Positions 7,183 to 58,883 of a DNA stretch of 64,000 nucleotides are shown in pieces. The notes under the pieces are model-generated. The model had not been told where the DNA came from and ran no database searches. It saw nothing but the letters and a program-made list of their open reading frames with translations. Each line of letters starts with the position of its first letter. Position 1 is the stretch's first letter. The stretch lies in IMG/VR virus record IMGVR_UViG_3300042359_000853, positions 124,001 through 188,000 of that record. One strand, given 5' to 3'. The position numbers were made by a program, and so were the translations under genes.

Positions 7183-10100
7183 ATGAATTTTACGATTGAG
7201 TGGTTTCAGTACATGACCTCAGATCTGGGTAATCCCAGAGTTTTTTCGATAAATAGTTTTCCGACTGCTAAAATCGCGGTCTCGATAGAAAGTAGCATCT
7301 TTCGTCTGTGGATAAATTCAGGCATTCGGTTTCAAGAGCCTGTTTCTCTAATACTTAACAATTGGACACACTTCGCTATTGTTTATACAAACGGTTCAAT
7401 AAAAATCTATAAAAACGGTCAAAAAATAGGAAATACCATTGAATATTATTCTGGTATGATCACTGATTATGATGATAAACTTTACATCGGAACTGATCTC
7501 GAAGAAGATTCTTATTTTTCTGGAAGATTATCAAATTTTAGATGGACGCAAGATGAAGTGTATTCATCAAACTTCAATCCATTGGCACAAAATTACGATG
7601 TATTAGCTGATACGATTTTATTATTGAAATTTGATGATATCAATGATTTTGTTTATGATAGCTCAGATACTGGCAAAGACACTTATGGATTCACTCTTTC
7701 TTGGAGCTCTACGAGTCCTATTGGTGGAAGTGGTTCAGTTGTTTTCAACGGTATTGATGGATATCTATATGTAGAACCGGTTGATGATTTTGATTTTTCT
7801 GCCGCTAGTATAACACCAACACAGACACCAACTCAAACCTTGACACCGACACCATCTCTAAGTATAGTTGCAACAAGTTCTACAACAACTACAACAACCA
7901 CGACTACTTCAACTTCTACTACTTCAACAACTACTTTAGAGCCAAGAGTAAATTATACAAGTAGAGTAAAATTTTTGTATAATAAAATAACTAAAATAGC
8001 TAGACGTGGTAAAGATTACTACTTCGAATGGGAACTGTTAGTTGATGAATCCTTAAAGCAAAAAGAATTAGGACTACTATCAGATGTTATGTTGAAATAC
8101 TTTGGTATAAACTGGGACAGATATCCGACCTTGGAAGATTTCAAGAAAAAATCTTGGCCACATATAAGATCTGTTACCGAAGGAGTGCAGAATGTTGAGC
8201 TTAAAAAAATATCAGATGCAAAAGGTGTTTACCAAATAGGTTGGGATTTCTATCTCGTATCTAACAACTATAGTATTGGACAAATCAAGGAACTTTTTGA
8301 GGATGGTAAGGAGATATTGAGAGTTTCTACACTTCTACAAATAGAAGATTTAACTTCAGCTACCTCAAGTATTTACGAAAAATATACCACTGGCATAGAT
8401 CTACTGAAATCAGATTATTTACTTATTTCACCTACACCCACCCCTACACAAACACCTACACCAACCGTAACGGTCACTCCTACAAAAACACCAACTAGAA
8501 CTCCAACACCAACTAGAACTATGACACCGACGGTCACTCAAACTCCAACAGTGACCGCAACACCAACTGTAACACCAACTGTAACATCAACTCTGACACC
8601 CACAGTTACACCATCTGTAACTGAAACGCCCACACAAACCTCAACTGTAACACCAACACAAACCGTAACACCAACCGAAACTTCTACTCAAACACCTACT
8701 CAAACACCAACTATTACACCTTCTGTGACTTCAACTATCACACCTACCGTTACATCAACACCAACAGAAACACCCACTCAAACATCGAGTGAGACTCCTA
8801 CCTCTACCGTTACACCTACTTTAACTGTTACACCGACTAGGACCGTAACACCGACCAATACACAAACACCTACAACCACACCAACTTCAACAATAACAGA
8901 AGGGTCGATAGCTTCGGGTGCTTTCTTCTACTTTGATCCAGGTAATACATCTTCTTATAGTGGCTCAGGAACTACTCTAAATGACATTAGTGGTAATGGT
9001 AATAACGGCTCTATATTCGGAAGTCCAGTTCATACATCTGGTGCGGGTGGATACTTCACCTTTGATGGTGTTAATGATTACATTTTGAGTCCAGACATTT
9101 ATTTCGGAGCTACCGAAACACATACTATTGAAGTTTGGATACGTCCTACCGCTGTGGATGATTGTATATGGTCCGATCTTGGACAGCCTACAATAAATGA
9201 TGGATATCATTTTGCCGGGGCACAAATATTACAAACAGGACCATTCAATCAAATCATTACTTCTTTGTGGAATGGAACTGCTGTAACTAGAGTAGTCAAT
9301 GGTGCGGGTAGTTATCTTAATACCTGGAAGCAAGTAGTTAGAGTGTATAACGGTAGTGTATTAACATCATATCTCGATGGGGTCATCGGTGGAACAATTT
9401 CAATTGCATATGATTCTCCACACAATGATGGAATCACCGATTGGTATTTAGCTTTTGGTGCTATTGATACGACTACTTACTTGGGCTCGGTTGCTGGTTA
9501 TTTTGCTGGTGGATATGGTATTATTCGATATTATAGAAGAGCTCTCTCTGCTAGTGAGGTTCTACAAAATTATAACTCAACGGTCTATAGCTACAACACC
9601 ACTACAACAACTACAACAACTATTGCACCTTCTTCAACACCAACTCCTACTCAAACACCTACTCAAACACCCACTTCTAGTCAAACACCAACCACCACAC
9701 CAACATCAAGTATAACAAACACACCAACTCAAACTCCTACAAATACTCCTTCTGTTACAACAACATCGGCTCCTGTTACTCTAGGGTTGGTTATTGAGTT
9801 GGATGCCTATGATTCTTCCAGCTATCCAGGGTCAGGAACAACAGTTTCTAACTTGCGGTCACCTGGAACCTACGATCATACGCTTACGGGCTCATCATTT
9901 ACAACTTTAAATGGTATCAAATGTTTTGACTGTTCATCAGGAACAAAGAGAGTTGTTGTAAATGGAACTGGTCCTCTCCTACCTACTACTGGATATACCT
10001 ATATTACTTGGGGTAGATTGAAAAACGATACCAGTGGATTTAGAACTTTACTTTACACAAATTCTCCTAAATATACACCAATAACTATCCCCGATGGTTC

Positions 10101-11112
10101 AAACACACTTGCGTATTGGGACACAGCACTCAGAAGTTCTGGATATGATGCGTCATCATCGGTAGAAGTTTGGGTTCAGTTTGCTGTCGTAGGTGACAGC
10201 TCATCCCAAACATTCTACATAAACGGATCTCAAGTTGGTAGTACAATTTCTTTCGGTGCTGGTGGAACTACACACTGGGGTTGGGGTAATAATGATATAG
10301 TTCCGCAATCTTTTGGTCATGTTGCCAATCTATATTTTTACAATAGAAAGTTATCACTAGCAGAAATCACACAACAATATGATTTCCTCTCTCCTAGATT
10401 TGTACAAGTAACACCAACACCAACTTCTACAACAACACCGACACCTACACCAACTCCTACTGTAACACCAAATAGTGATATGTTACTTAAATTAGACGCT
10501 AATCTTTCAGAGAGTTATCCAGGCTCAGGCACTACTTGGTATGATCTAGCAGGCACACAACAAAACATGACTCTTGTTGGTAATCCTACTTTTGTTTCTG
10601 GAACTATATCTTATTTCGATTTCAACGGATCAGGTCAATATGCGCAAGGATCGGGTCTTACTGTTCCAACAACGGTTTATACTAAGTCCGTCTGGTTCTG
10701 GGTAGATGTATATACTGATAACAACATAGTAAGTGGATTTGATGGTGTTGGTGGTCACTTCATGTATATGGGTAGCTCACCAAAAATACAAGTTGGTCAC
10801 CACAATCAAGGGGTTGTATTCAATACCTATCAATCTACTGGAACAATATCACTTAATACATGGTACAATGTAGTTGTAACTTTCAATACTTCGAATGGAT
10901 TTAAAATTTATATAAATGGTCAGTTCGACAGTTCTCACAATATGACATTAGCACATCTTGGTAGTGGAACTACAAATTTAGCTAGTTACGCTAATACGGG
11001 GGGTAATTATCTAAATGGAAGAATATCAAAAGTCTATACTTGGCAAAAAGTTTTATCTGATCAAGAAGTTCTTGATATGTATAATCTTGATAAATCTTAC
11101 TTTGGTCACTAA
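7183..11112 (+). CDS. Multi-LamG/ConA-like lectin-domain fiber/adhesin with Thr/Pro-rich linkers
   Basis: N-terminal LamG (WTHFAIVY..IYKNG) plus three modules starting D(P/A)xxSxSYxGSGTT with Y(L/I)(D/N)G cores, separated by (TP)n/(T)n tracts. Confidence 0.8.
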   Translation: MNFTIEWFQYMTSDLGNPRVFSINSFPTAKIAVSIESSIFRLWINSGIRFQEPVSLILNNWTHFAIVYTNGSIKIYKNGQKIGNTIEYYSGMITDYDDKLYIGTDLEEDSYFSGRLSNFRWTQDEVYSSNFNPLAQNYDVLADTILLLKFDDINDFVYDSSDTGKDTYGFTLSWSSTSPIGGSGSVVFNGIDGYLYVEPVDDFDFSAASITPTQTPTQTLTPTPSLSIVATSSTTTTTTTTTSTSTTSTTTLEPRVNYTSRVKFLYNKITKIARRGKDYYFEWELLVDESLKQKELGLLSDVMLKYFGINWDRYPTLEDFKKKSWPHIRSVTEGVQNVELKKISDAKGVYQIGWDFYLVSNNYSIGQIKELFEDGKEILRVSTLLQIEDLTSATSSIYEKYTTGIDLLKSDYLLISPTPTPTQTPTPTVTVTPTKTPTRTPTPTRTMTPTVTQTPTVTATPTVTPTVTSTLTPTVTPSVTETPTQTSTVTPTQTVTPTETSTQTPTQTPTITPSVTSTITPTVTSTPTETPTQTSSETPTSTVTPTLTVTPTRTVTPTNTQTPTTTPTSTITEGSIASGAFFYFDPGNTSSYSGSGTTLNDISGNGNNGSIFGSPVHTSGAGGYFTFDGVNDYILSPDIYFGATETHTIEVWIRPTAVDDCIWSDLGQPTINDGYHFAGAQILQTGPFNQIITSLWNGTAVTRVVNGAGSYLNTWKQVVRVYNGSVLTSYLDGVIGGTISIAYDSPHNDGITDWYLAFGAIDTTTYLGSVAGYFAGGYGIIRYYRRALSASEVLQNYNSTVYSYNTTTTTTTTIAPSSTPTPTQTPTQTPTSSQTPTTTPTSSITNTPTQTPTNTPSVTTTSAPVTLGLVIELDAYDSSSYPGSGTTVSNLRSPGTYDHTLTGSSFTTLNGIKCFDCSSGTKRVVVNGTGPLLPTTGYTYITWGRLKNDTSGFRTLLYTNSPKYTPITIPDGSNTLAYWDTALRSSGYDASSSVEVWVQFAVVGDSSSQTFYINGSQVGSTISFGAGGTTHWGWGNNDIVPQSFGHVANLYFYNRKLSLAEITQQYDFLSPRFVQVTPTPTSTTTPTPTPTPTVTPNSDMLLKLDANLSESYPGSGTTWYDLAGTQQNMTLVGNPTFVSGTISYFDFNGSGQYAQGSGLTVPTTVYTKSVWFWVDVYTDNNIVSGFDGVGGHFMYMGSSPKIQVGHHNQGVVFNTYQSTGTISLNTWYNVVVTFNTSNGFKIYINGQFDSSHNMTLAHLGSGTTNLASYANTGGNYLNGRISKVYTWQKVLSDQEVLDMYNLDKSYFGH
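8428..8895 (+). repeat. Low-complexity Thr-Pro coding repeat (mucin-like linker); smaller tracts near 7810-7935, 9595-9770, 10410-10470
   Basis: Degenerate ACNCCN codon runs encoding TPTQTPTxTPT. Confidence 0.9.
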
Positions 11113-11879
11113 CCGAATAAATCATCACTTTTACCGTAGAAATGTTCCCTCAAAATTGGTAGATAATCATGACATTTGTATATCTTAGCTTCGTCGCCCT
11201 CTGGTCCTAAATGAACGAGATATCCCGATGGTATGATAATACCTTTACCCTCTAGGATAAGACGGTAGAGTGAAATCTGAATCGAATATTCATTGAGGTG
11301 AGTTTTACACCAATCTTGGAAAGGAGGTAGGAGTTTTTCCCAACATTTTTCAGATTCATCTACACCAGTGAACTTTTTATTGGATTTCCAATCAATAATA
11401 AATGGTATATCACCTTTTAGAAAAATAGAATCAATCGTTCCAGCAAGACCAAGCTCACCAGAGAAAACTTTAAGTTCAAACACGACTGGCTCAAAGTTTT
11501 TTAGATACTTAGCCCAGAAAAGATTGAATTTGTTGATTCTACGAACAGCTTCAATATCTGTAGGTAGTTCTTGATAAATGCCGTTGTAGTAGTTCTCGAC
11601 CCACTTATGAACTGAAGTTCCAAGATCGGTGGATATTTTGGCACCAGTTTTCCATTCTAATAAAATCTCTTCTACTGGAACTCCAGTTTTTTCGCTCCGT
11701 TTTTTTGCCCAAAAATCTTCGTCGAATTTTTTATGAAATCTCGAGATATATTTAGTAACTGAAGTAAGTTCAGTATCTCTATAATAATATCGGTGAGCTG
11801 CCTCGTTAAAGACAAACTCTTTATCCTTGAAAACTTCTAATCTATCCTTGAGATTCTGGGTTGCTATCTTGTTCGTCAT
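11109..11879 (-). CDS. PD-(D/E)XK exonuclease (Cas4/YqaJ-like)
   Basis: TSVT..GTSVH..E..LAGTIDSI..IIDWKSN..YSIQISLY. Confidence 0.85.
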   Translation of the reverse strand: MTNKIATQNLKDRLEVFKDKEFVFNEAAHRYYYRDTELTSVTKYISRFHKKFDEDFWAKKRSEKTGVPVEEILLEWKTGAKISTDLGTSVHKWVENYYNGIYQELPTDIEAVRRINKFNLFWAKYLKNFEPVVFELKVFSGELGLAGTIDSIFLKGDIPFIIDWKSNKKFTGVDESEKCWEKLLPPFQDWCKTHLNEYSIQISLYRLILEGKGIIIPSGYLVHLGPEGDEAKIYKCHDYLPILREHFYGKSDDLFG

Positions 11880-13395
11880 CTGGATTATAGTCTAGAAGAG
11901 ATGATGGTGTCTCAATAAAAGTTTCCTCTCTGTTTCTAATCATATTTATAGAAACTCTGAGTTGAGAAGCTAATTCTTGTCTGAGTAATTCAGAATTTCT
12001 GAGTAATTCAGAACGGTCCCGGTCTACGACTATATCGGATCGGAGTCTTCGTGTATCCAAGTGCCCTGTAATATCGCCCATAGATTCCTCATATACAACC
12101 TGTTCAGATGGGTCTTCTGATACATTTATATCTACCGCTGCATTATTTTCATTACCTAGTTCGGGTTCGGGTCGTTGAATCTCGATCGTTTGTTGATGTA
12201 GAAATCTTCTGTAAGGATTTCTTTCAGTTAATAACTCTCTGAATTTCTCTACTTTTTTCATTTTCAGATCTGCTACATCTGAATTTTCAATATCACCGTT
12301 GAGCTCTTCCCATTTTCCTGAGAAAAGATGATCTTCAATTTTATCAGAATATCTACAATCATCAACATGAATCCATCGATTAAGAATATCAGATGAAACA
12401 ACACGGTTTCTATGAACTCTGATATCACGATAATCTAGATAGATTACATCTGAACTATTGTAGTAGTTCAAGTCCTCTTGACTTTGCTCAAGTGAACTAC
12501 TGGGATTAAAAGATCCACTAGAAGAGGTCATTACTACGATTCTCTCACTATTTTTTGGATGATAGTTGTAGAAAGTTTTACTATCCAGGTCAAAAAACTT
12601 GAACGTATCTAAATAGGGAAATCTACTAATATCGGTAGTATCAAGTTTTACCGAAAGTTCAAGGTATTGACGCTTTCCATCTACCATAAACCATAAAGAA
12701 GAGTTCCAACTCTGTTCAGCGCGGCAGTAGTATCCGTTTTCTGTAGCAAAGTCTTTAAAGAGTCCACGATACACAGAATCGTTGGTTGTGTAGATTCTAT
12801 CCATGATTTTCAGACCACCATCGACTTCCCAAAGAAGAGCTCTTCCTAAGAGTGTTCCGAAAATTTTATCACGAAGAATAAGTAGATCGATAGTTCCACT
12901 ATTTTTCGTGTAGAGATCAAAGAACTCCTGACAAGATTTATGCTTCATACAAGACGAGTTCAAGCTACCGTGTGTTCGCTTATCGTAACTTTCTTCATCA
13001 TACCACCATGTGATTTCCTCACCAGTGGCGATGGAAAACTGGGTATGTAGTTTAGATCCGTGAGATTTGATACTATCGATGAATATTTCCATTTCTTGAT
13101 AGTCAATTTTTCTAAAAATCTTAGAAATAACACCAGATGGTTTTGTTTGATAACGCTTTGATGAAGACCAAATCTCATCTTGAGAAATCTTCTCAAACCT
13201 ATCGTGTGTAAGGTAGGAAAGTTTTGAAGGATCAGAAATCGAAATGCCTAAGTAGTTGACAGGATCTTCTACGATTTCATCAAGAGGTATTCTACCCTCA
13301 AGAAGAATCCTCGCGTAGTAAGATTTAGAAGATATAGCTTCAAGAAGATTGTGAAGCTCGGGTGAGATTTCTGGTTTGAAATAAGTTGGTTCCAT
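11842..13395 (-). CDS. Conserved phage protein, SCM-RALLW-MDRIY family, copy 1
   Basis: SLNSSCMKH..GRALLW..IMDRIY..FPYLDTFKF; paralog of 46286..47707. Confidence 0.7.
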   Translation of the reverse strand: MEPTYFKPEISPELHNLLEAISSKSYYARILLEGRIPLDEIVEDPVNYLGISISDPSKLSYLTHDRFEKISQDEIWSSSKRYQTKPSGVISKIFRKIDYQEMEIFIDSIKSHGSKLHTQFSIATGEEITWWYDEESYDKRTHGSLNSSCMKHKSCQEFFDLYTKNSGTIDLLILRDKIFGTLLGRALLWEVDGGLKIMDRIYTTNDSVYRGLFKDFATENGYYCRAEQSWNSSLWFMVDGKRQYLELSVKLDTTDISRFPYLDTFKFFDLDSKTFYNYHPKNSERIVVMTSSSGSFNPSSSLEQSQEDLNYYNSSDVIYLDYRDIRVHRNRVVSSDILNRWIHVDDCRYSDKIEDHLFSGKWEELNGDIENSDVADLKMKKVEKFRELLTERNPYRRFLHQQTIEIQRPEPELGNENNAAVDINVSEDPSEQVVYEESMGDITGHLDTRRLRSDIVVDRDRSELLRNSELLRQELASQLRVSINMIRNREETFIETPSSLLDYNPDDEQDSNPESQG

Positions 13396-14336: not shown

Positions 14337-15203
14337 TTAGGTTAAGTTTGTGTAGTTCATCACCAAAACTTCGGTTGCTCGTGATTGTTTTTGTCCACTT
14401 TTAGCCATCGCTGCTTTTGCGAACTCTTGCTGAGTCCATCGGTAACTATCCTTAGGAAACCACTCTTCGAGCTCATTAAAGGGATAATAAGATAGTGAAA
14501 ATTTTCCCGAGATTGATTTTAGACAATTTGCTAGACGAAGATGGTCTCGAGAAGTAAAATCGTGATTGGAATAGTAGGATCCCTCACCGACTTTCCAATA
14601 GGGTGGATCGCAATAGAAATAAGTATCAGGTGAATCTAAGAGAGTAATGATCTGTTCAAAATCAAGCCGATAAACATCGGTTATTAGAGAAAACTTTTCG
14701 CACCATTTATCATTCTCTAGTTTATTGATAAAAGATTGAAACTTCGAGTGGTATTTACCCTTCAGATCAATATATCCTGAAGTCTTGGGATTTGCTCCTG
14801 AGAAGATATTAGAAAGAATCAGCGCGTGTTTGGCAGCTCTTTCGAGATTTGGGACTTCTTCTATTTTGGATTCATCACCATAGAGCTCTCGTTGAGATTG
14901 TAAAAAAAAGTTTTTAGTATCTAAAGATGAACCTACACCCTTTTTTTGATAGGGAAAACTTTTACATATTTCTAAAACACCTTTAGGATCTTGACGAAGA
15001 CTTAGAAAAAGATTGTAGTTCAAGGGGTTCAAATCGTTATAGACAATCCTTTCAAGGTGTGGGTAGTTATCCAAGTTCATTCCGAAATAAGTCCAGAACA
15101 TACCCGAGAAAGTTTCTACATAAGTTTTGATATTTTTTGGTATTTCGGGTATAATCAACTTTTTAGCTATTTGACTTTTACCACCGATATAGGGAAGGCA
15201 CAT
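14337..15203 (-). CDS. dam: DNA adenine methyltransferase (Dam/D12 class), copy 1
   Basis: PYIGGKS, ETFSG, YNDLN, CDPPY. Confidence 0.9.
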   Translation of the reverse strand: MCLPYIGGKSQIAKKLIIPEIPKNIKTYVETFSGMFWTYFGMNLDNYPHLERIVYNDLNPLNYNLFLSLRQDPKGVLEICKSFPYQKKGVGSSLDTKNFFLQSQRELYGDESKIEEVPNLERAAKHALILSNIFSGANPKTSGYIDLKGKYHSKFQSFINKLENDKWCEKFSLITDVYRLDFEQIITLLDSPDTYFYCDPPYWKVGEGSYYSNHDFTSRDHLRLANCLKSISGKFSLSYYPFNELEEWFPKDSYRWTQQEFAKAAMAKSGQKQSRATEVLVMNYTNLT

Positions 15204-46285: not shown

Positions 46286-47707
46286 ATGATTGATAAATAT
46301 TCCCAGTTTTTAGCACAAAAACTCTTATTAGAATCTGAAATCAAATATTCTGATGGTTTTAGAAAGATATTATCTGATATTGGTGACCCAGTAAGTAAAA
46401 CACTATCTTCTCTGGAAAATCAAGATATTAAAACGAATGTTAATTTTATTGATATTCTCAAAGATGATAAAGAGCAATTATCGTTTATTCAAGATAAAAA
46501 AGCTTCAACTCTTTTAAGTAAACTCAAAAATGAAATAGATGTAACTTGGAATGGACAGGGTGGAATACTCAAGAACAACGCGGATAATGAAGATGTTTTT
46601 TCAGCTCTTGGATATGTTAGACCTGAATCCGGTAATCTTCCAAGACCAGCTTCTACACAAACCAGAGGAAAATTATTGAGAGATACGATTTCACCTAAAA
46701 GTGGTAAAATCTATGTTCTTGTAAAGTTTGGTGATATGGAAACAGTTCTCAATAAAGAGTTCTTAAATTTTGTTGATAGATCCGATGAGATCTGGACCCA
46801 ATCAGTTAGACAACCCATGCGTGTAGGAAGAGCAGTGACTGCTCTATTACAAAATGCACCTGTGAAACACACTTCGGTTGAAATTGCTGATTTTGTAAAT
46901 AGATATAAAACAAAAGTTGATGAACTAAATGACGTATTTAGATTTATAGAAGTTGTAAGTGGTGATGATATAGCTAAGTGGTATCATGTAGAAAACTATG
47001 AAGAAAAATCGGGTGGTTCAGAACTTCACCGATCATGTATGGCAAGAAAATCAGCAGGTGTCTTTGAAATCTATACCAAGAATCCAGAAGTTTGTCAGTT
47101 AATTATTCAAAAAAGTGAGAGTGATCCCGACAAAATATCCGCTAGAGCTCTTCTGTGGACTTTGAATAGTGGAAAAAAGTTTATGGATAGAGTTTATTTT
47201 AATGATCCTCAGTCTATTGAGTTATTTAGAAGTTATTGTAAAGAAAATAATATATGGGCTAAATATAATAATAATAGCGGAGCTTTTTCATCTGCTATTA
47301 ATCCCGAAAATGGATCTAGAGAAGAGATCGAAATAGAAGTGGTTCTTGAATCGAGGAAGTACCGTCAGTTTCCCTATATGGATACACTGAAGTTTTTTCA
47401 TCCGAAAAAAGCAATTCTAGACAACTCACATGAGGATGATCCGAACTGGTATAAATTAGAAGACACCGCTGGTGATTATATAAGTCAAGAAGATCAGGGG
47501 TGTGATAGGTGCTACGGTGAAGATTATGTTGATTGTTGGGAATGTGATGGAACGGCTTATTCTAGTTGTGATAATTGTGACGGAGACGGTAAAGTTGAAG
47601 ATGAAGATGGAACAAAAGTTGAATGTGATGTATGCAATGGTAGTGGCAGAATCAATTGTGATACTTGTGATGGGGATGGAAGACTTACTTGTCCTGAATG
47701 TGGTTAA
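46286..47707 (+). CDS. SCM-RALLW-MDRVY family protein, copy 2, with C-terminal DnaJ-type zinc finger
   Basis: RSCMARK..ARALLW..FMDRVY..FPYMDTLKF; five CxxCxG repeats plus a terminal CPEC. Confidence 0.75.
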   Translation: MIDKYSQFLAQKLLLESEIKYSDGFRKILSDIGDPVSKTLSSLENQDIKTNVNFIDILKDDKEQLSFIQDKKASTLLSKLKNEIDVTWNGQGGILKNNADNEDVFSALGYVRPESGNLPRPASTQTRGKLLRDTISPKSGKIYVLVKFGDMETVLNKEFLNFVDRSDEIWTQSVRQPMRVGRAVTALLQNAPVKHTSVEIADFVNRYKTKVDELNDVFRFIEVVSGDDIAKWYHVENYEEKSGGSELHRSCMARKSAGVFEIYTKNPEVCQLIIQKSESDPDKISARALLWTLNSGKKFMDRVYFNDPQSIELFRSYCKENNIWAKYNNNSGAFSSAINPENGSREEIEIEVVLESRKYRQFPYMDTLKFFHPKKAILDNSHEDDPNWYKLEDTAGDYISQEDQGCDRCYGEDYVDCWECDGTAYSSCDNCDGDGKVEDEDGTKVECDVCNGSGRINCDTCDGDGRLTCPECG

Positions 47708-47709
47708 GA

Positions 47710-48651
47710 TTAAATCTTGATTCCTGTCACTGGATCGTAGTTTAAAATAAGAATCTCACGACCTTTTTCTTGTGGTTTTTTTGTTGATGCGTTATTTCCA
47801 CCTGAGGCAGAGGATCGATTAACTTCTTTTTCATACCACACATATTTATCTTTCGGAAGAAGCTCTTCAAGTAATGGAAAGTAATAATAAGATAGAGACC
47901 ACCTTGAAGATGTAGTTTTAAGAAGTTCTAATAACCTTCTATGTGAAGCGGGACCGAATACACCTTCAGAATCTGCACCATACCAAAATAATCTTTTAGC
48001 ATCATCTTCACCCTTTTCATTTGGTCTAAAATAAGGTGGATCTAGATATAGATAAGTTGTTGGGCTATCCCATTTTCTAATCAGAACCTCGAAATCTAGA
48101 TTATTAAATTCAGTGATTGAATTTAACTTCTGCTCATATTTGCCCTCTTTAAGTTTTTTTAGAAGTGTAAGAAGTTTTAGTCGGTCTTTATCTTTTTTGT
48201 AACCATTAAACCCAGCTCCTCTTGGATAAACCGAATTGTGAGAAGATGTGATTAAAAACGCGTAGATTGCTGCTCTCTTTAGGTCAGGAATCTCGAAATC
48301 TGTAATATCCAAGAAATCATTCTTGGTATATTTGTGGTAGATAGATTTGTAAAAATCCCATTTTTTTAAGGGGTCAGTTTCTGTCGTTCTTAGAGGACCA
48401 GATAAGAACTTTTCTAGAACATCTACGAATGCATCTTTTTGAGAAGCACATTTGAAGAGATTGACTTGGTGTCTGTTTTTATCATTGAAGATGACTTTGT
48501 CAAAGACCAACTCTGGATCATCCATGTAAGTGGCAAAGCTACCACTGAATGGTTCAATATAACAATCTATACCGGTTTTGGGAATTTTTTTATTGATAAA
48601 TTCCATAAAAACATTCGAACTCTTGCCGCCAAAAAAACTGATAATTGACAT
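47710..48651 (-). CDS. dam: DNA adenine methyltransferase (Dam/D12 class), copy 2
   Basis: SFFGGKS, EPFSGS, FNDKN, LDPPY. Confidence 0.9.
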   Translation of the reverse strand: MSIISFFGGKSSNVFMEFINKKIPKTGIDCYIEPFSGSFATYMDDPELVFDKVIFNDKNRHQVNLFKCASQKDAFVDVLEKFLSGPLRTTETDPLKKWDFYKSIYHKYTKNDFLDITDFEIPDLKRAAIYAFLITSSHNSVYPRGAGFNGYKKDKDRLKLLTLLKKLKEGKYEQKLNSITEFNNLDFEVLIRKWDSPTTYLYLDPPYFRPNEKGEDDAKRLFWYGADSEGVFGPASHRRLLELLKTTSSRWSLSYYYFPLLEELLPKDKYVWYEKEVNRSSASGGNNASTKKPQEKGREILILNYDPVTGIKI

Positions 48652-49440: not shown

Positions 49441-51099
49441 TTAGTCAAATTTGAATTTTATAGTGCCGGTCTCAAATACAATAGTAGGTTTGAAACCCGT
49501 ATCGTCAAAAAGTTTTTTGTAGGTTTCAAGCTCTCTTTTCACCGTTAGGATAGGAGTTTCATCTACTGGAAGCAATAGATAGAAGTTTTCATCATCGGTA
49601 TAAACCTTTTTTGAGTTGAATAACCTTTGTCTTTTCATCTTCATAATCAGTGAGCCATATTTAGCTGAGATAGATGGATCTAGACCTACTTTTCTAGCTA
49701 TACGAAGATTATTCCAATTTACACCGAGAGTTGCTCTTGCTAATCTTTCGAGAAAAGAAATGTTTTGCATTTCAGTATGTGTATGCTCTGAGAAATATCC
49801 AACAGAGATGTTTGTACATTCTGGTATAAGATCCATAAATGATGCTGAATCGGTGAACACACCGGTGTTATCTAACCTCATCTGCATACCATTCGCGTTA
49901 AGTTCATCACATAGACTTTGAGCAAAGACGTTTGAGCAACAAGTTTGAGAAAGTTGAGAAGTGATTACTGAGAAATAGTTTCTTCTATCAAAAGAAATAC
50001 ATTTTTTCATACCTCTAAGATGTTGTATAGTATCAAAGTTTTCAGCTACTTTACTAGATCCAATAGCCCCGCGCTCTTCACCAATAAAGAAGTAATACAC
50101 ACCAGGTATTCTGTTAGCAATCATATAAAGAAGTATAGTAACACCAGCCTTATCATCAGCTCCAAGTATAGATGTTCCATCAGTTACAAAAATTTCATCT
50201 CCGTTCTCGGTATAGGAAAGAACTCTAACTGCACTTTTAGTTCTTGATGCTGTGTCAGTGTGACAAGTAAACATGGTATCAGAATTTCCGATGACTAAGT
50301 AGTAGTTTCCCCACTGGTCCTTTTGTAGACCAGGAACAGGTAGATATTCCATGACTTCTTCTTCGTGTCCATGTGGATAAGTCTCAGTTGTAAGAGATAA
50401 GAAAGTAGATCGAACGTCTTTTGGATCATATTGAAATGGACGAACCGTTACTGGATCCCCTTTAGCTACTGAATAATATTTACTACCATAACTAGATCCG
50501 TAACCATAAGATGTTCCGGTTCCCCAACTTTTGTTGCCACTTTTAGATGACCACGAACCCGAACCACCATACAATTCAACATCTGAACCATCGTAATAAT
50601 CATAATCATCATCACGAGCACCTTTAGAAGTAGAAGTTGATCCAGAAGTTTTGCTCAAACTAGGAATAAGAGGTTTTTTCTGAACCCAACGATTATAATA
50701 GATCAAAAAGTTCTGAACAAGGGAGTCTAATTGTTTTTTGGTGTATTTAGAAGAAAAATCCGGATTTTTACCCATGAAATATTTTAGAAGAGCACTCACA
50801 CCAATCACACCGGTCTTTTCTCCAAGTACGACATCAAAATAATCAGGTGAAGTAGAGCAGTCTAAAGTTTTCAGATTTATCTTGTTTTCATACTTATCAT
50901 TTTGGTGTAGATCGAAGAAAAACTCACAAACAACAATTGTTTCATCCAACGACTTTGATGTTTTATCATTAACTTTGGCTTTATCATAGGATAAATCTGA
51001 TAGATCGCCGAGCATCACCCAAAATCCATCTGTGAAATTAATTAGTGGCCCGGATTCTCCACCTTCTAACATTTCTATTTTTTCTTTTTCTTTTTGCAT
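49441..51099 (-). CDS. M28/M20-like zinc hydrolase, copy 1, with extra N-terminal domain
   Basis: YPHGHE, FTCHTDT, LGADDKAG, GEERG, SFDRR, FTDS, PECTNISVGY..EH. Confidence 0.85.
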   Translation of the reverse strand: MQKEKEKIEMLEGGESGPLINFTDGFWVMLGDLSDLSYDKAKVNDKTSKSLDETIVVCEFFFDLHQNDKYENKINLKTLDCSTSPDYFDVVLGEKTGVIGVSALLKYFMGKNPDFSSKYTKKQLDSLVQNFLIYYNRWVQKKPLIPSLSKTSGSTSTSKGARDDDYDYYDGSDVELYGGSGSWSSKSGNKSWGTGTSYGYGSSYGSKYYSVAKGDPVTVRPFQYDPKDVRSTFLSLTTETYPHGHEEEVMEYLPVPGLQKDQWGNYYLVIGNSDTMFTCHTDTASRTKSAVRVLSYTENGDEIFVTDGTSILGADDKAGVTILLYMIANRIPGVYYFFIGEERGAIGSSKVAENFDTIQHLRGMKKCISFDRRNYFSVITSQLSQTCCSNVFAQSLCDELNANGMQMRLDNTGVFTDSASFMDLIPECTNISVGYFSEHTHTEMQNISFLERLARATLGVNWNNLRIARKVGLDPSISAKYGSLIMKMKRQRLFNSKKVYTDDENFYLLLPVDETPILTVKRELETYKKLFDDTGFKPTIVFETGTIKFKFD

Positions 51100-53444: not shown

Positions 53445-54014
53445 ATGAAATATAAAGTAAGTGAATATGCTAAATTGAAAAACGTTACCTACCGAACCGT
53501 TTGGAACTGGATAAAATCAAATAAGATAGACTATCAAACTACAAACACCGGTGGTCTGGTTATAGTTGAAGAAGATCCCAATTCAAATAAAGAGGTAGCA
53601 GTTTATGCTCGTGTTTCTTCATCAGAGAATAAAGATAATCTAGAAAGACAGAAAAATAGATTATTGGACTATTGTGCTTCTAGAGGATATAAAGTTTCTA
53701 GTATAGTAACAGAGATTGGATCTGGATTGAACGATAAAAGACCAAAATTAGAAAAAATTCTAACAAATAGATCTATAAGTATAATTGTAGTTGAACATCG
53801 GGATAGATTATCAAGATTTGGATTTAATTATATAGAAAAACTATTAAATTCAAATGATAGAAGGATAGAGGTAATAAATGAGCCTCTTAATGAAAAAGAA
53901 GATTTAATACAAGACTTTGTATCTATAATTACTAGTTTTACCGCTAGATTGTATGGACAAAGAAGAAGTAAAAGAAGAACCGAATTTCTTATAAAAAATC
54001 TACAAAGTGAATGA
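53445..54014 (+). CDS. tnpA: IS607 transposase (MerR-like HTH + serine recombinase)
   Basis: VTYRTVWNW; VYARVSS..LERQ; EIGSGLN; EHRDRLSRFG; ARLYG. Confidence 0.95.
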   Translation: MKYKVSEYAKLKNVTYRTVWNWIKSNKIDYQTTNTGGLVIVEEDPNSNKEVAVYARVSSSENKDNLERQKNRLLDYCASRGYKVSSIVTEIGSGLNDKRPKLEKILTNRSISIIVVEHRDRLSRFGFNYIEKLLNSNDRRIEVINEPLNEKEDLIQDFVSIITSFTARLYGQRRSKRRTEFLIKNLQSE

Positions 54015-55180
54015 TCCTAGTTGAAAAGCACATAATTAGATCAGGTAAATATTTCAATCAACTAATGGAAGTTACTAGATTGAGTAAAAATCTTTATAAT
54101 TCTGGTTTGTATGCTGTGAGGCAGCACTATTTTGAATACAAGAAGTTCTTAAATTATGTAAATCTTAATAATATGTTTGTTGAACAGAAACAACAAGATT
54201 ATTACAAACTACCAGCAAAGGTTAGCCAACAAACACTGAAAATGGTGGAACAAAATTTCAAATCATTTTTTGGATTACTAAAATCTGAAAAAACTAAAAA
54301 GGTAAAAATACCTAAATATCTGGATAAAAATTCCAGTTTTTTAACAATTTGGACAAATCAAGCAGTTTCTCTCAAAAAGAAGGGTTACTTAAAGCTATCA
54401 GGAACTGATGTCTATATCAAAACAGATATTGATCATATCAATCAAGTTAGAGTTGTTCCTAGAAATAATGAGTTAGTAGTAGAGATATTATATGAAGTCC
54501 GGGAAAATGATTTAAAGAAAGATAACGGAAAATATTCATCTATAGATCTTGGCATCAATAATCTCATGACTTTATCGGGAAACACAACAAAACCTATTAT
54601 AGTCAATGGGAAACCACTAAAATCTATTAATCAGTATTACAACAAGAAAAAATCCGAAATTCAGGGTAAATTAGAAACAATCAACAAAACAAAAAAGAGC
54701 AAAAAATTAAATAAACTAACAAACAAAAGAAACAACAAAATAAATGATTATCTACACAAATCAAGTAAAATAATTATCAATCATTTAGTTTCCAAAGATA
54801 TATGTACTTTAATAGTTGGATACAATCAATACTGGAAACAAGAGATAAATATTGGAAAAAAGAATAATCAGAATTTTGTTTCAATTCCCTATCTAAAATT
54901 ATTAAATATGTTAGAATACAAATGTAAAAAAGAAGGCATTAACTTTGTCAAAAACGAGGAGAGTTATACATCCAAGTGCTCGTTTATAGATGGTGAGGAA
55001 ATTAAAAAACATACAAAATATTTAGGTAAAAGAATAAAAAGAGGATTATTCGAGAGCGCGTCTGGTAAATTGATAAATGCGGATTTGAATGGATCTCTAA
55101 ATATTCTCAAAAAAGTAGTTGGGGAATTTCAGTACCCAATAGAGGTGTGTAGCACGCCAAAAGTTATTAATTTAGCTTAG
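54011..55180 (+). CDS. tnpB: TnpB RNA-guided endonuclease
   Basis: SKNLYN, SIDLGINN (RuvC-I), DYLHKSS, EESYTSKC, NADLNGSLNI (RuvC-III). Confidence 0.95.
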   Translation: MILVEKHIIRSGKYFNQLMEVTRLSKNLYNSGLYAVRQHYFEYKKFLNYVNLNNMFVEQKQQDYYKLPAKVSQQTLKMVEQNFKSFFGLLKSEKTKKVKIPKYLDKNSSFLTIWTNQAVSLKKKGYLKLSGTDVYIKTDIDHINQVRVVPRNNELVVEILYEVRENDLKKDNGKYSSIDLGINNLMTLSGNTTKPIIVNGKPLKSINQYYNKKKSEIQGKLETINKTKKSKKLNKLTNKRNNKINDYLHKSSKIIINHLVSKDICTLIVGYNQYWKQEINIGKKNNQNFVSIPYLKLLNMLEYKCKKEGINFVKNEESYTSKCSFIDGEEIKKHTKYLGKRIKRGLFESASGKLINADLNGSLNILKKVVGEFQYPIEVCSTPKVINLA

Positions 55181-56398: not shown

Positions 56399-56938
56399 AT
56401 GTTTGATTCTCTACATCAGTCAAGTTTTATTATCTTTTTCGATTATGATCACGCTCAAAAATCTATTATAGAATCCATTCTTTATTCAAGAAATTGGTTT
56501 ATTCGTAATATATCTAAAGTGGACGATACACTTACAAGTGAAGCTCTTTTTTGCTACACACTTGATGATGTAAACTTGAAATCTGAAGCTCTGTATCTTT
56601 TACAAAAAACAGGCCTTCGTCACTGCGTTGTTTCTATTGAAAACTCTCTATTCATACTGACTCGTTCGAATGAATCTATAAAAATTTCTAGAGTAGTAGA
56701 TGAGAACGATATCGAGCCGGTGATATTATACTTTATCATTCAAAATATGCCCTATAGATTTGTAAGAGAAAAAACTTATAATCTGGTTTCTATGAAAGAA
56801 GATTTAGAAAATGGAACCCAAGTTCAAGTTTTAGACGGTAAGGTGTGGATTGACATGGTTGTAGAAGATTTAGATAGTGAATGGAAAAACCTCTACGGAA
56901 TCCTATCTAAATACGGCAGGGTTCGTATTCAAAGATAA
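56399..56938 (+). CDS. Hypothetical protein
   Basis: ORF with late motif upstream. Confidence 0.6.
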   Translation: MFDSLHQSSFIIFFDYDHAQKSIIESILYSRNWFIRNISKVDDTLTSEALFCYTLDDVNLKSEALYLLQKTGLRHCVVSIENSLFILTRSNESIKISRVVDENDIEPVILYFIIQNMPYRFVREKTYNLVSMKEDLENGTQVQVLDGKVWIDMVVEDLDSEWKNLYGILSKYGRVRIQR

Positions 56939-57791: not shown

Positions 57792-58883
57792 ATGAAAATT
57801 ATAGACACTTTTTTAGAGCTGACCTCTCAAACTTATCCACACGGTCACGAACGGGAACTTGAACGATTTTTACCGAAAGGTATTTGTATCGATGAGTTTG
57901 GAAACTATTTTATGTATGTTGGAGATAAAACAACTACGACAATGTTTACTTGTCACTTAGATACCGCATCGTATGAAAAATCAAGAGTAACACATGTTAT
58001 TCGTGATGATAAAATTTTTACCGATGGTCGAACCATTCTCGGAGCTGACGATAAATCTGGTATGACTATCCTTCTTTGGATGATTCATAAAGGTGTTCAA
58101 GGTCTTTATTATTTTTTTCTAGGTGAAGAAAGAGGTTGTGTTGGTTCGGGAAAACTTAAAAGAGTATTTACCGAAATGTATCCACTGATTACGAAAATAA
58201 TTTCTTTCGATAGACGAGGCACACACTCGGTGATTACACACCAATCTTACGGAAGAACAGCCTCAGACGAGTTCGCTAGAGATCTATCAAGGCGACTAAA
58301 CGAAACCGGTTATGGTTTTAGGTATGAGCCGGATCCCACGGGTATTTACACCGATTCCAATCAGTTTGCCTCGATAGTTCCAGAATGCACAAATATTTCA
58401 GTAGGTTACCGAGACGAGCACTCAACTTATGAATCTCAAATTATTTCACACCTTGAAAATCTTTGCTACGCAGTTACTCAAATTGATTGGGAATCAGTAG
58501 TAGTAGCTAGAGACCCTAAGGTAAAAGATAGTGGTTGGGGATACGACTATGGATATTGGGGGAGGAGCCAAAGCTATACTGAACGAGATGAATGGTTCGA
58601 TGATTACTTTAGTCAATCGGATAGTTCTACCTATTCTCACGGGAAAACTTACTATGACGGAATAACGATAGACGAATTCGGTGATCCCGTTGATAGTAAT
58701 GACGAAATTTCACTTGAAGATATTAAGATGGTCCTCGATAAAATGGAAGTCGAATACCAAAAAATCCACTGGAATGGTGAAGAATGTTATGTTGAAATTG
58801 ATGGTTCTATGCAGTATTTTGCCGATAGAGAAAACTTAGTTGATTTTATCGATTATTATCAACACTTCTCTAACCAAGAATAA
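57792..58883 (+). CDS. M28/M20-like zinc hydrolase, copy 2
   Basis: YPHGHE, FTCHLDT, LGADDKSG, GEERG, SFDRR, YTDS, PECTNISVGY..EH. Confidence 0.85.
   Translation: MKIIDTFLELTSQTYPHGHERELERFLPKGICIDEFGNYFMYVGDKTTTTMFTCHLDTASYEKSRVTHVIRDDKIFTDGRTILGADDKSGMTILLWMIHKGVQGLYYFFLGEERGCVGSGKLKRVFTEMYPLITKIISFDRRGTHSVITHQSYGRTASDEFARDLSRRLNETGYGFRYEPDPTGIYTDSNQFASIVPECTNISVGYRDEHSTYESQIISHLENLCYAVTQIDWESVVVARDPKVKDSGWGYDYGYWGRSQSYTERDEWFDDYFSQSDSSTYSHGKTYYDGITIDEFGDPVDSNDEISLEDIKMVLDKMEVEYQKIHWNGEECYVEIDGSMQYFADRENLVDFIDYYQHFSNQE

What the first reader, a model, noticed from the sequence alone, without database searches (positions are those of the whole stretch)
49441..51099. Hydrolase copy 1 appears to carry the same N-terminal domain as the SCM proteins
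By eye, 49441 INFTDGFWVMLGDL...VIGVSALLKYF...YTKKQLDSLVQNF aligns with 46286 IKYSDGFRKILSDI...MRVGRAVTALL...HTSVEIADFVNRY and more weakly with 11842 (ISPELHNLLEAI...KPSGVISKIF...EMEIFIDSI). A G/S/Y-rich low-complexity linker joins this domain to the hydrolase. A shared module on two different enzymes would suggest common docking or localisation.
Basis: inference. Interest (0 to 1): 0.65.

Follow-up and report, generated by a model that had tools for sequence, protein, structure and literature searches.

The report
Shared N-terminal module on phage peptidase
The first ~145 residues of a huge-phage zinc peptidase are a diverged copy of an unannotated ~100-residue domain that also heads the multi-copy "SCM" protein family, so two unrelated protein bodies carry the same front end, whose role is still unknown.

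Summary
Compared directly, the peptidase N-terminus (P0001, 49441..51099, minus strand) and the SCM N-termini are no more alike than shuffled controls (BLASTP E 0.045; hhalign E 0.2; HMMER scores inside the shuffled range).

The peptidase core has 3,814 relatives. Of the 120 best, 119 carry a ~110-residue N-terminal module whose consensus is far more SCM-like than P0001's own copy.
- That module profile matches the SCM N-terminus at hhalign E 1.2e-15 (98.6%, 89-98 columns). The score is 90, against 11.6±2.1 for column shuffles.
- Each half is significant alone: E 1e-7 for the first, score 55 against 10.7±2.1 for the second.
- It matches P0001's own subfamily at E 5e-14 over 106 columns.

In four 634-735 kb phage genomes, a profile built from peptidases alone found 25 places: 2 peptidases, 22 SCM proteins and 1 other. 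The 79-residue linker is 67% G/S/Y/T/D.

The module has no Pfam, PHROG or PDB match. A shared docking or localisation role is plausible but untested, and SCM proteins are not shown to be enzymes. The structural test failed because the P0001 model reached only pLDDT 48.

The parts
50671..51051 (-). P0001 residues 17-143: diverged copy of the shared N-terminal module
   Evidence: The HMM of 73 peptidase-family N-extensions, which contains no P0001-type sequence, hits residues 17-143 at E 2.9e-10 and is the top hit among 548 genome ORFs. hhalign A2 against A4 gives Prob 98.2 and E 4.9e-14 over 106 columns.
50935..50994 (-). P0001 residues ~36-55: lineage-specific insert inside the module
   Evidence: This stretch is a gap opposite the family profile in the hhalign alignments. 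It is absent from intermediates P0132-P0135.
50434..50670 (-). P0001 residues 144-222: low-complexity G/S/Y/T/D-rich linker
   Evidence: 67% of residues are G, S, Y, T or D. Length and sequence vary among orthologues. Typical family members have only 10-25 residues here.
49660..50427 (-). P0001 residues 225-480: MH-clan (PepT/M20-M28-like) zinc peptidase domain
   Evidence: phrog_4191 'peptidase' matches at E 1.1e-63. Weak PepT and M28 hits appear. H280, D282, D315, E341, E342, D417 and H439 are conserved in 40 of 40 relatives.
49444..49659 (-). P0001 residues 481-552: conserved C-terminal ~72-residue extension, no family match
   Evidence: A C-terminal extension of 60-79 residues (72 in those printed) is present in 100 of 120 relatives. 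There is no Pfam hit.
46325..46489 (+). P0002 residues 14-68: first half of the module (two helices and a beta-hairpin)
   Evidence: hhalign of the peptidase module against SCM N1 alone gives Prob 94.3 and E 9.9e-8; the score of 43 compares with 10.2±1.8 for shuffles. The AF2 model has pLDDT 91.8.
46490..46804 (+). P0002 residues 69-173: insert that splits the module and contains an SH3-like beta-barrel (about residues 84-165)
46805..46930 (+). P0002 residues 174-215: second half of the module (strand and two helices)
   Evidence: hhalign gives E 6.7e-14 and 2.8e-13. The score of 55 compares with 10.7±2.1 for shuffles.
46931..47485 (+). P0002 residues 216-400: SCM core, function unknown
   Evidence: Homologous to P0003 at E 2e-25. 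More than 120 relatives. Invariant S-C-M, R, W, D-R-x-Y and P-Y-x-D positions. No known family.
47486..47704 (+). P0002 residues 401-473: DnaJ/BSD2-type cysteine-rich zinc-finger repeats
   Evidence: P0002 itself scores below the cut-offs. Relatives reach the BSD2_CRD threshold.
13048..13371 (-). P0003 residues 9-116: compact, diverged copy of the module with no insert
   Evidence: A compact SCM N HMM built without the window's own proteins gives E 1.9e-5 for residues 11-120. The combined profile gives E 2.1e-14, but P0003 was in that alignment. Against the peptidase profile the match is weak: E 8.5e-4, Prob 24.
12508..13047 (-). P0003 residues 117-296: SCM core
   Evidence: The SCM core HMM gives E 2.4e-50. 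BLASTP to P0002 gives E 2e-25.
57792..58883 (+). Hydrolase copy 2: the same peptidase family without the module
   Evidence: 48% identity to P0001 residues 232-477, starting at its own residue 6. phrog_4191 matches at E 4e-67. The module HMMs do not hit it.

Best explanation
Shown: P0001 is a four-part protein.
- Residues ~17-143 are a diverged member of an unannotated ~100-residue alpha/beta module. Its order is helix, helix, beta-hairpin, strand, helix, helix.
- Residues 144-222 are a flexible low-complexity tether.
- Residues 225-480 are a PepT-like zinc peptidase with all metal ligands intact.
- The last ~72 residues are a conserved tail.

The same module forms the N-terminus of every SCM-family protein examined, including P0002, P0003 and a third paralogue outside the window. 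In P0002 the module is split by an SH3-like insert. In each of the three genomes where a module-bearing peptidase was found (this record, LR745206, LR756502), one peptidase copy carries the module and the other copies examined do not. The module has therefore been exchanged between two unrelated protein bodies within Mahaphage-type huge phages.

Inferred: the module is non-catalytic and works as an adaptor that brings whatever is fused behind it to the same partner or place. About 0.4 of the probability lies on docking or localisation and about 0.3 on binding a common ligand or substrate in cis. In P0001's lineage, the long disordered linker would let the peptidase reach targets while the module stays anchored.
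For: - Profile-profile homology: E 1.2e-15 over 89-98 columns, with each half significant on its own.
- Column-shuffle controls give z of 18 to 38.
- P0001 is linked to the peptidase module at E 4.9e-14 and E 2.9e-10. Its 12-sequence clade links directly to SCM at E 2.3e-4.
- Specificity in the 227.6 kb genome: the peptidase-derived HMM hits only P0001, P0002 and the third SCM paralogue. The next ORF scores E 0.39.
- Specificity in four other huge-phage genomes: the 25 places found are 2 peptidases, 22 SCM proteins and 1 other.
- A combined profile finds 47 module-bearing ORFs in five genomes: 43 SCM-type, 3 peptidases and 1 with an unrelated small C-terminal domain.
- MAFFT aligns both families collinearly, with one nearly invariant Phe.
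- 119 of 120 peptidase relatives keep the module.
- The N-domain is 79-91% identical among P0001 orthologues, which argues that it is under constraint.
- Adaptor reading: the module is always N-terminal and followed by a linker, it tolerates a 105-residue insert, and it sits on at least three different C-terminal bodies.
Against: - The direct P0001-to-SCM comparison is not significant on its own. The link for P0001 therefore rests on transitivity through its family and on the E 2.3e-4 clade profile.
- No structural confirmation exists, because the P0001 N model has pLDDT 48.
- No partner, ligand or location is known.
- The module is almost always on SCM proteins (43 of 47), so it could simply be an integral part of SCM function that one peptidase lineage borrowed.
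- The homodimer test gave no verdict.
- Peptidase and SCM genes are neighbours in this window and in LR756501, but not in LR745206 or LR756502.
Confidence: 0.72

Rival explanations
1. The resemblance is chance. The by-eye alignment strings together short amphipathic-helix motifs that are common in an AT-rich phage proteome.
For: Every direct test is at background:
- BLASTP E 0.045 and E 3.2.
- hhalign E 0.2, with the score equal to the shuffle mean.
- HMMER forward scores within the shuffled range.
- Exhaustive HMMER with the P0001 N profile found no SCM protein.
Against: - Deep profiles give E 1e-15, with z of 18-38 over shuffles for the whole module and for each half.
- Significance rises steadily with profile depth: 0.23, then 2.3e-4, then 1.2e-15 for 5, 12 and 73 sequences.
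- A peptidase-only profile picks out 22 SCM proteins and essentially nothing else in 2.6 Mb of other phage genomes.
Confidence: 0.03
2. The module is a ligand- or substrate-recognition domain acting in cis. It would bind a peptide, protein or nucleic-acid feature that both the peptidase and the SCM core then act on, rather than docking to a shared site.
For: - In SCM proteins the second half of the module abuts the core without a linker and travels with it. The match to Cellulophaga phage proteins starts at P0002 residue 175.
- SCM proteins often end in DnaJ/BSD2-type zinc fingers, which are known from established work on DnaJ to contact unfolded proteins.
- The conserved K-x-G-x-F-x-R stretch is basic.
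Against: - No ligand is identified.
- The long disordered tether in P0001 fits anchoring better than a rigid substrate-positioning domain.
- No known binding fold was found. The PDB searches were dominated by the SH3-like insert.
Confidence: 0.3
3. The module is a virion-incorporation signal. Module-bearing proteins, 8-19 matched places in each complete huge-phage genome searched, would be packaged and delivered together into the host.
For: - It is an N-terminal element shared by a large paralogous set in huge phages.
- General knowledge: T4 and phiKZ-like phages direct internal proteins to the head through N-terminal elements.
Against: - There are no proteomic data.
- The Cellulophaga phage homologues are annotated only as hypothetical proteins.
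- No protease-cleavage motif was examined.
- The module is far larger than known capsid-targeting peptides.
Confidence: 0.12
4. The module is an oligomerisation domain that lets module-bearing proteins self-associate or form mixed complexes.
For: - The peptidase here has no detected M20-type dimerisation lid; only weak M28 and PepT matches to the catalytic part were found.
- Many paralogues carry one common module.
Against: Nothing positive. The homodimer prediction scored 0.00, which the tool says is not evidence either way.
Confidence: 0.08

Closest known systems
N-terminal module of the huge-phage PepT-like peptidase family (phrog_4191 relatives; module itself unannotated)
   Same: P0001 residues 17-143 align over 106-109 columns with the ~110-residue N-extension carried by 119 of the 120 closest relatives. 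The order of elements is the same and the module is followed by the same peptidase.
   Different: P0001's lineage has a ~20-residue insert and further small insertions. Its linker is ~80 residues of low complexity instead of 10-25 residues. Its sequence has drifted so far that it no longer matches SCM proteins directly.
N-terminus of the SCM protein family (P0002, P0003; 8-19 module matches in each complete 634-735 kb Mahaphage genome searched)
   Same: It is the same module by profile comparison (E 1.2e-15) and has the same N-terminal position.
   Different: A different body follows it: the SCM core, with or without zinc fingers, and no linker. P0002 has a 105-residue insert with an SH3-like barrel between the two halves.
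Peptidase T and the M20/M28 zinc peptidases (MH clan)
   Same: The catalytic domain has the H-x-D, D, E-E, D and H ligand pattern, conserved in 40 of 40 relatives. It gives local hits to PepT models and to PDB 3rza and 3gb0.
   Different: It scores below the Pfam M28 and NCBIfam PepT cut-offs. It also carries an N-terminal module and a C-terminal tail that those families do not have.
Conserved N-terminal adaptor domains of phage tail fibres and tailspikes, and the capsid-targeting N-terminal elements of T4 and phiKZ internal proteins (from general knowledge)
   Same: The logic is the same: one N-terminal element shared by proteins with different C-terminal activities, which places them at a common site.
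   Different: There is no sequence relationship and none was tested here. Those elements belong to structural or packaged proteins. Nothing shows that the proteins here are in the virion.
Bacterial SH3b / SH3_3 domains
   Different: The scores are modest and there is no sequence match. The insert is not part of the shared module and is absent from P0001.

Membership tests
Peptidase-family N-terminal module (profile A4 / nshort, defined here) | End-to-end profile match to the ~110-residue module, using a profile that excludes the query's own subfamily | tested here: met
   hmmsearch gives E 2.9e-10 for residues 17-143. hhalign gives E 8.1e-15 and 4.9e-14 over 106-109 columns.
Peptidase-family N-terminal module | Position at the N-terminus, directly upstream of the phrog_4191-type peptidase | tested here: met
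   The domain order is the same in P0001 and in 119 of 120 relatives.
SCM N-terminal module | Direct significant match of P0001, or of its close orthologues, to the SCM N profile | tested here: not met
   hhalign gives E 0.21-0.23. HMMER scores lie within the shuffled range. P0001 is not hit at E<=10.
SCM N-terminal module | Match of P0001's wider clade (12 sequences with intermediates) to the SCM N profile, collinear over both halves | tested here: met
   E 2.3e-4 and score 29.9 over 101 columns, P0001 7-143. Shuffle backgrounds for comparable queries were 11.6-12.5±2.1-2.5.
SCM N-terminal module | Family-level profile-profile match of the peptidase module to SCM N, with each half significant on its own | tested here: met
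   Whole module E 1.2e-15. First half E 9.9e-8. Second half: score 55.4 against the N2-only profile (shuffles 10.7±2.1); hits confined to the second half against the full SCM N profile give E 6.7e-14 and 2.8e-13. z is 18-38 over shuffles.
SCM N-terminal module | Same three-dimensional fold | tested here: inconclusive
   The SCM N model is confident (pLDDT 91.8). The P0001 N model is not (pLDDT 48). Helices predicted at P0001 24-35, 101-111 and 121-140 fall where SCM helices align, but this is weak evidence.
MH-clan zinc peptidase (M20/M28, PepT-like) | Metal-ligand and catalytic pattern H-x-D ... D ... E-E ... D ... H | tested here: met
   H280, D282, D315, E341, E342, D417 and H439 are conserved in 40 of 40 relatives. 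The same motifs can be read in copy 2.
MH-clan zinc peptidase (M20/M28, PepT-like) | Score above the curated family cut-off (Pfam Peptidase_M28 21.3 bits; NCBIfam PepT 255-293 bits) | tested here: not met
   12.7-14.2 bits for M28 and 26-30 bits for PepT models. Only phrog_4191 'peptidase' matches strongly, at E 1e-63.
   No PDB sequence hit below E 0.5. Only 4 of 58 members touch DUF7277, all below its cut-off. No PHROG family for the core.

The most novel reading that the evidence does not exclude
The module is a dedicated address tag that defines a set of module-bearing proteins in each huge phage (8-19 matches in the complete genomes searched): the expanded SCM family, one peptidase and at least one other protein. 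All would be recruited to one site, such as the virion interior for co-injection or a phage-built compartment or host machine. The peptidase would have been co-opted into that set by domain capture, and the long low-complexity tether in P0001's lineage would be an adaptation for reach.
Probability: 0.2. Interest if true: 0.7.

Novelty: new member of a known kind. Interest (0 to 1): 0.5.

Why it matters
Huge phages of 0.5-0.7 Mb are made up mostly of unannotated genes. This work defines a new ~100-residue domain, absent from Pfam and PHROGs and without a sequence relative of solved structure, that links two of their prominent families:
- a very strongly conserved peptidase, 62-67% identical across the closest of its 3,814 relatives;
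- a family expanded to about ten or more copies per genome.

The link gives one experimental handle for both families: find what the module binds, or where it goes.

There is also a methodological point. A correct by-eye call was invisible to pairwise, shallow-profile and even exhaustive HMMER tests. It became decisive only when the profile was built from the neighbouring catalytic domain's relatives.

Tried and rejected
- Pairwise BLASTP of the N-termini gave E 0.045 and E 3.2.
- hhalign of 4-5 P0001-type sequences against SCM N, in local and global modes, was at the shuffle background, and the global alignment was not collinear.
- SCM N HMMs run against all 548 genome ORFs, and against shuffled P0001, P0006 and P0128, gave no signal.
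- BLASTP of P0001 and P0128 against 122 SCM N-termini, with shuffles, put P0001 at background. P0128 was marginal, with two competing registers.
- The word search with P0001 1-150 found only 3 close orthologues.
It returned only 2 clusters, both hydrolase fusions. A deep module profile would have been a better query.
- ESM Atlas feature searches for P0001 1-150 and P0145 1-108 gave no usable hit.
- The AF2 model of the P0001 N-domain reached pLDDT 48 and was not used for fold search.
- Foldseek against PDB with the SCM N model gave nothing at E<=1e-3. VIA-wide and the Atlas search were dominated by the SH3-like insert, so the fold of the module itself remains untested.
- BFVD gave only uncharacterised 'uncultured marine phage' proteins, which I could not retrieve.
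- Pfam, PHROGs and PDB-sequence searches of the module found nothing.
- The module homodimer prediction gave no verdict, which is neither for nor against binding.
- Two apparent extra architectures, L072 and L067, turned out to be divergent SCM-type proteins.
- Read laying, sequencing-run searches and alternative genetic codes were not needed and were not used.

Full report
**What is at the coordinates.** The window is bases 124001-188000 of a 227.6 kb IMG/VR virus record that CheckV estimates to be 39% complete.

- ORF 57792..58883 (plus strand, 363 aa) is copy 2. It is 48% identical over the catalytic domain only and starts directly with that domain.
- ORFs 46286..47707 (P0002) and 11842..13395 (P0003) are the 'SCM' proteins. 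They are homologous to each other over P0002 167-382 (E 2e-25).
- A third SCM paralogue lies outside the window, at genome 16322..17611.

The closest named records are the 634-735 kb 'uncultured phage' genomes LR745206 and LR756501-LR756504. I take these to be the largest genomes of Al-Shayeb et al. 2020 on the strength of matching sizes: that paper describes genomes of these lengths as Mahaphage-clade phages predicted to infect Bacteroidetes (PMC7162821). The accession numbers themselves do not appear in its main text.

**First round: the claim looked wrong.**

- BLASTP of the N-termini gave E 0.045 (14 identities in 52 columns) for P0002 and E 3.2 for P0003.
- The word search with P0001 1-150 found only three close orthologues.
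- Because that left the domain open, I spent the one exhaustive HMMER search on this profile. It returned two clusters, both hydrolase fusions, and no SCM protein.
- hhalign of the resulting 5-sequence profile against a 122-sequence SCM N profile gave E 0.21-0.23. The score of 13.0 compares with 13.1±2.5 for column-shuffled queries.
- SCM N HMMs did not hit P0001 at E<=10 among 548 genome ORFs. They scored P0001, P0006 and P0128 inside the range of their shuffled versions.

**Turning point.** A search with the peptidase core (residues 225-480) found 3,814 relatives. The 120 best are 445-620 aa long and mostly 62-67% identical in the core.

Nearly all of these have an N-terminal extension of about 120 residues, and its consensus is visibly SCM-like. 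P0001 and its kin (P0004-6, P0128-131) are a diverged branch with inserts. P0132-135 are intermediates.

**Second round: the claim holds.**

*Peptidase module against SCM.* I built a profile of 73 short N-extensions containing no P0001-type sequence.
- Against the SCM N-terminus with its variable insert removed: Prob 98.6, E 1.2e-15, 89-98 columns spanning the whole module.
- Against the full SCM N: E 6.7e-14.
- Against the first 80 SCM residues alone: Prob 94.3, E 9.9e-8.
- Column-shuffle controls: 90.0 against 11.6±2.1 for the whole module, 43.2 against 10.2±1.8 for the first half, and 55.4 against 10.7±2.1 for the second half.
- The in-house hhalign tool, run on independently built alignments, agrees: A4 against A3, Prob 98.0, E 2.8e-13.

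*P0001 against the peptidase module.* P0001's own profile matches that module at E 4.9e-14 over 106 columns. Its 12-sequence clade matches SCM directly at E 2.3e-4 over 101 collinear columns.

*Specificity.* This is the strongest argument.
- In this genome the peptidase-derived HMM hits only P0001 (E 2.9e-10), P0002 (E 2.8e-6, in two collinear pieces) and the third SCM paralogue (E 0.008). The next ORF scores E 0.39.
- In four other huge-phage genomes the same peptidase-only profile finds 25 places. They are 2 peptidases, 22 proteins with an SCM core and 1 other.
- A combined profile finds 47 module-bearing ORFs in five genomes. They are 43 SCM-type, 3 peptidases, and one 281-aa protein with an unrelated C-terminal part.

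**Register.**
- P0001 19-33 corresponds to P0002 18-32.
- P0001 97-108 corresponds to P0002 177-187.
- P0001 119-131 corresponds to P0002 195-207.

Between these blocks P0001 has a lineage-specific insert at about residues 36-55. Its residues 74-92 correspond to the SCM beta-hairpin at P0002 53-68, which is not the register BLASTP suggested.

P0003 carries a compact and more diverged copy. A non-circular SCM HMM gives E 1.9e-5 for residues 11-120.

**Anatomy of the module.**
- The SCM N model is confident, with pLDDT 91.8. It shows helices at 23-32 and 35-43, a hairpin at 53-57 and 64-68, a strand at 176-179, and helices at 180-188 and 197-214.
- In P0003, in compact SCM proteins and in the peptidases, the two halves are contiguous.
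- The module has no Pfam, PHROG or PDB-sequence match.

**The rest of P0001.**
- Residues 144-222 are 67% G, S, Y, T or D, and they vary in length among orthologues. Typical relatives have a short linker here.
- The catalytic domain matches phrog_4191 at E 1e-63 and matches PepT and M28 models weakly. H280, D282, D315, E341, E342, D417 and H439 are conserved in 40 of 40 relatives.
- A ~72-residue C-terminal tail is conserved in most relatives.

**Function.** The homology is shown. The role is inferred.

The module is always N-terminal, sits on at least three different bodies, tolerates a large insert, and in P0001 is tethered by a long disordered linker. All of this fits a non-catalytic adaptor.

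Several cautions apply.
- The SCM core has no known family, so 'two enzymes' is not established.
- A homodimer prediction gave no verdict.
- SCM and peptidase genes are neighbours here and in LR756501, but not in LR745206 or LR756502.

**Novelty.** Domain sharing between phage proteins is ordinary. This particular domain is undescribed, and it ties together two abundant huge-phage families.

Noticed in passing
genome 16322..17611 (-), outside the window: A third SCM paralogue (429 aa) with a full module and core but no zinc finger. The record therefore holds at least three SCM genes in 227.6 kb.
   Followed up: partly
window 46535..46780 (+), P0002 residues ~84-165: An SH3-like beta-barrel is inserted between the two halves of the module. 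It resembles bacterial SH3b/SH3_3 domains at modest scores. It is absent from P0003, from compact SCM proteins and from the peptidases.
   Followed up: partly
window 14337..15203 (-) and 47710..48651 (-): Two D12-class adenine methyltransferase paralogues (32% identical, E 1e-31) each lie within about 1 kb of an SCM gene. This may be an old segmental duplication of an SCM-methylase pair.
   Followed up: no
window 53445..55180 (+): A serine resolvase gene overlaps a TnpB/OrfB_IS605 gene, which is an IS607-like mobile element inside the phage genome.
   Followed up: partly
P0127 (264 aa, metagenomic; not in the window): This protein has a P0004-like module and linker. Inside the low-complexity linker it diverges into a glycine-rich repeat protein. 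It is either an assembly chimera at the repeat or a further fusion partner of the module.
   Followed up: no
window 58524..58660 (+), copy 2 residues ~245-290: Hydrolase copy 2 also has a Y/G/S/D/W-rich low-complexity stretch, but it lies after the catalytic domain and before a ~70-residue C-terminal part. The two paralogues thus have disordered tethers on opposite sides of the catalytic domain.
   Followed up: no
L009 1129..1974 (LR756501, about 270.4-271.2 kb): A 281-aa protein has a basic N-terminal tail, the module (E 4.5e-19) and an unrelated ~110-residue C-terminal part with no Pfam match. It is the only non-SCM, non-peptidase architecture found.
   Followed up: partly
LR756501 about 60-67 kb and 433-442 kb (loci L075, L028, L011, L022, L030): SCM paralogues sit in tandem arrays. 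The second array ends next to a module-less peptidase gene at 440.9 kb, so peptidase and SCM genes lie close together there, as they do in this window.
   Followed up: partly
P0157, P0162, P0198, P0229 (peptidase relatives with N-extensions of ~200-225 aa): An extra ~95 residues ahead of the module look like a degenerate second copy. Only P0229 gives a partial second hit, at E 9e-4.
   Followed up: partly
window 56399..56938 (+): This 179-aa ORF gives weak hits to the first half of the SCM module (E 0.007-0.02 in a 548-ORF search). The hits are not significant, and neither the peptidase-derived profile nor the combined profile finds it.
   Followed up: partly
window 7183..11112 (+): A 1,309-aa ORF in which long Thr/Pro-rich repeat linkers separate several globular segments. 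It was seen only in the translation.
   Followed up: no
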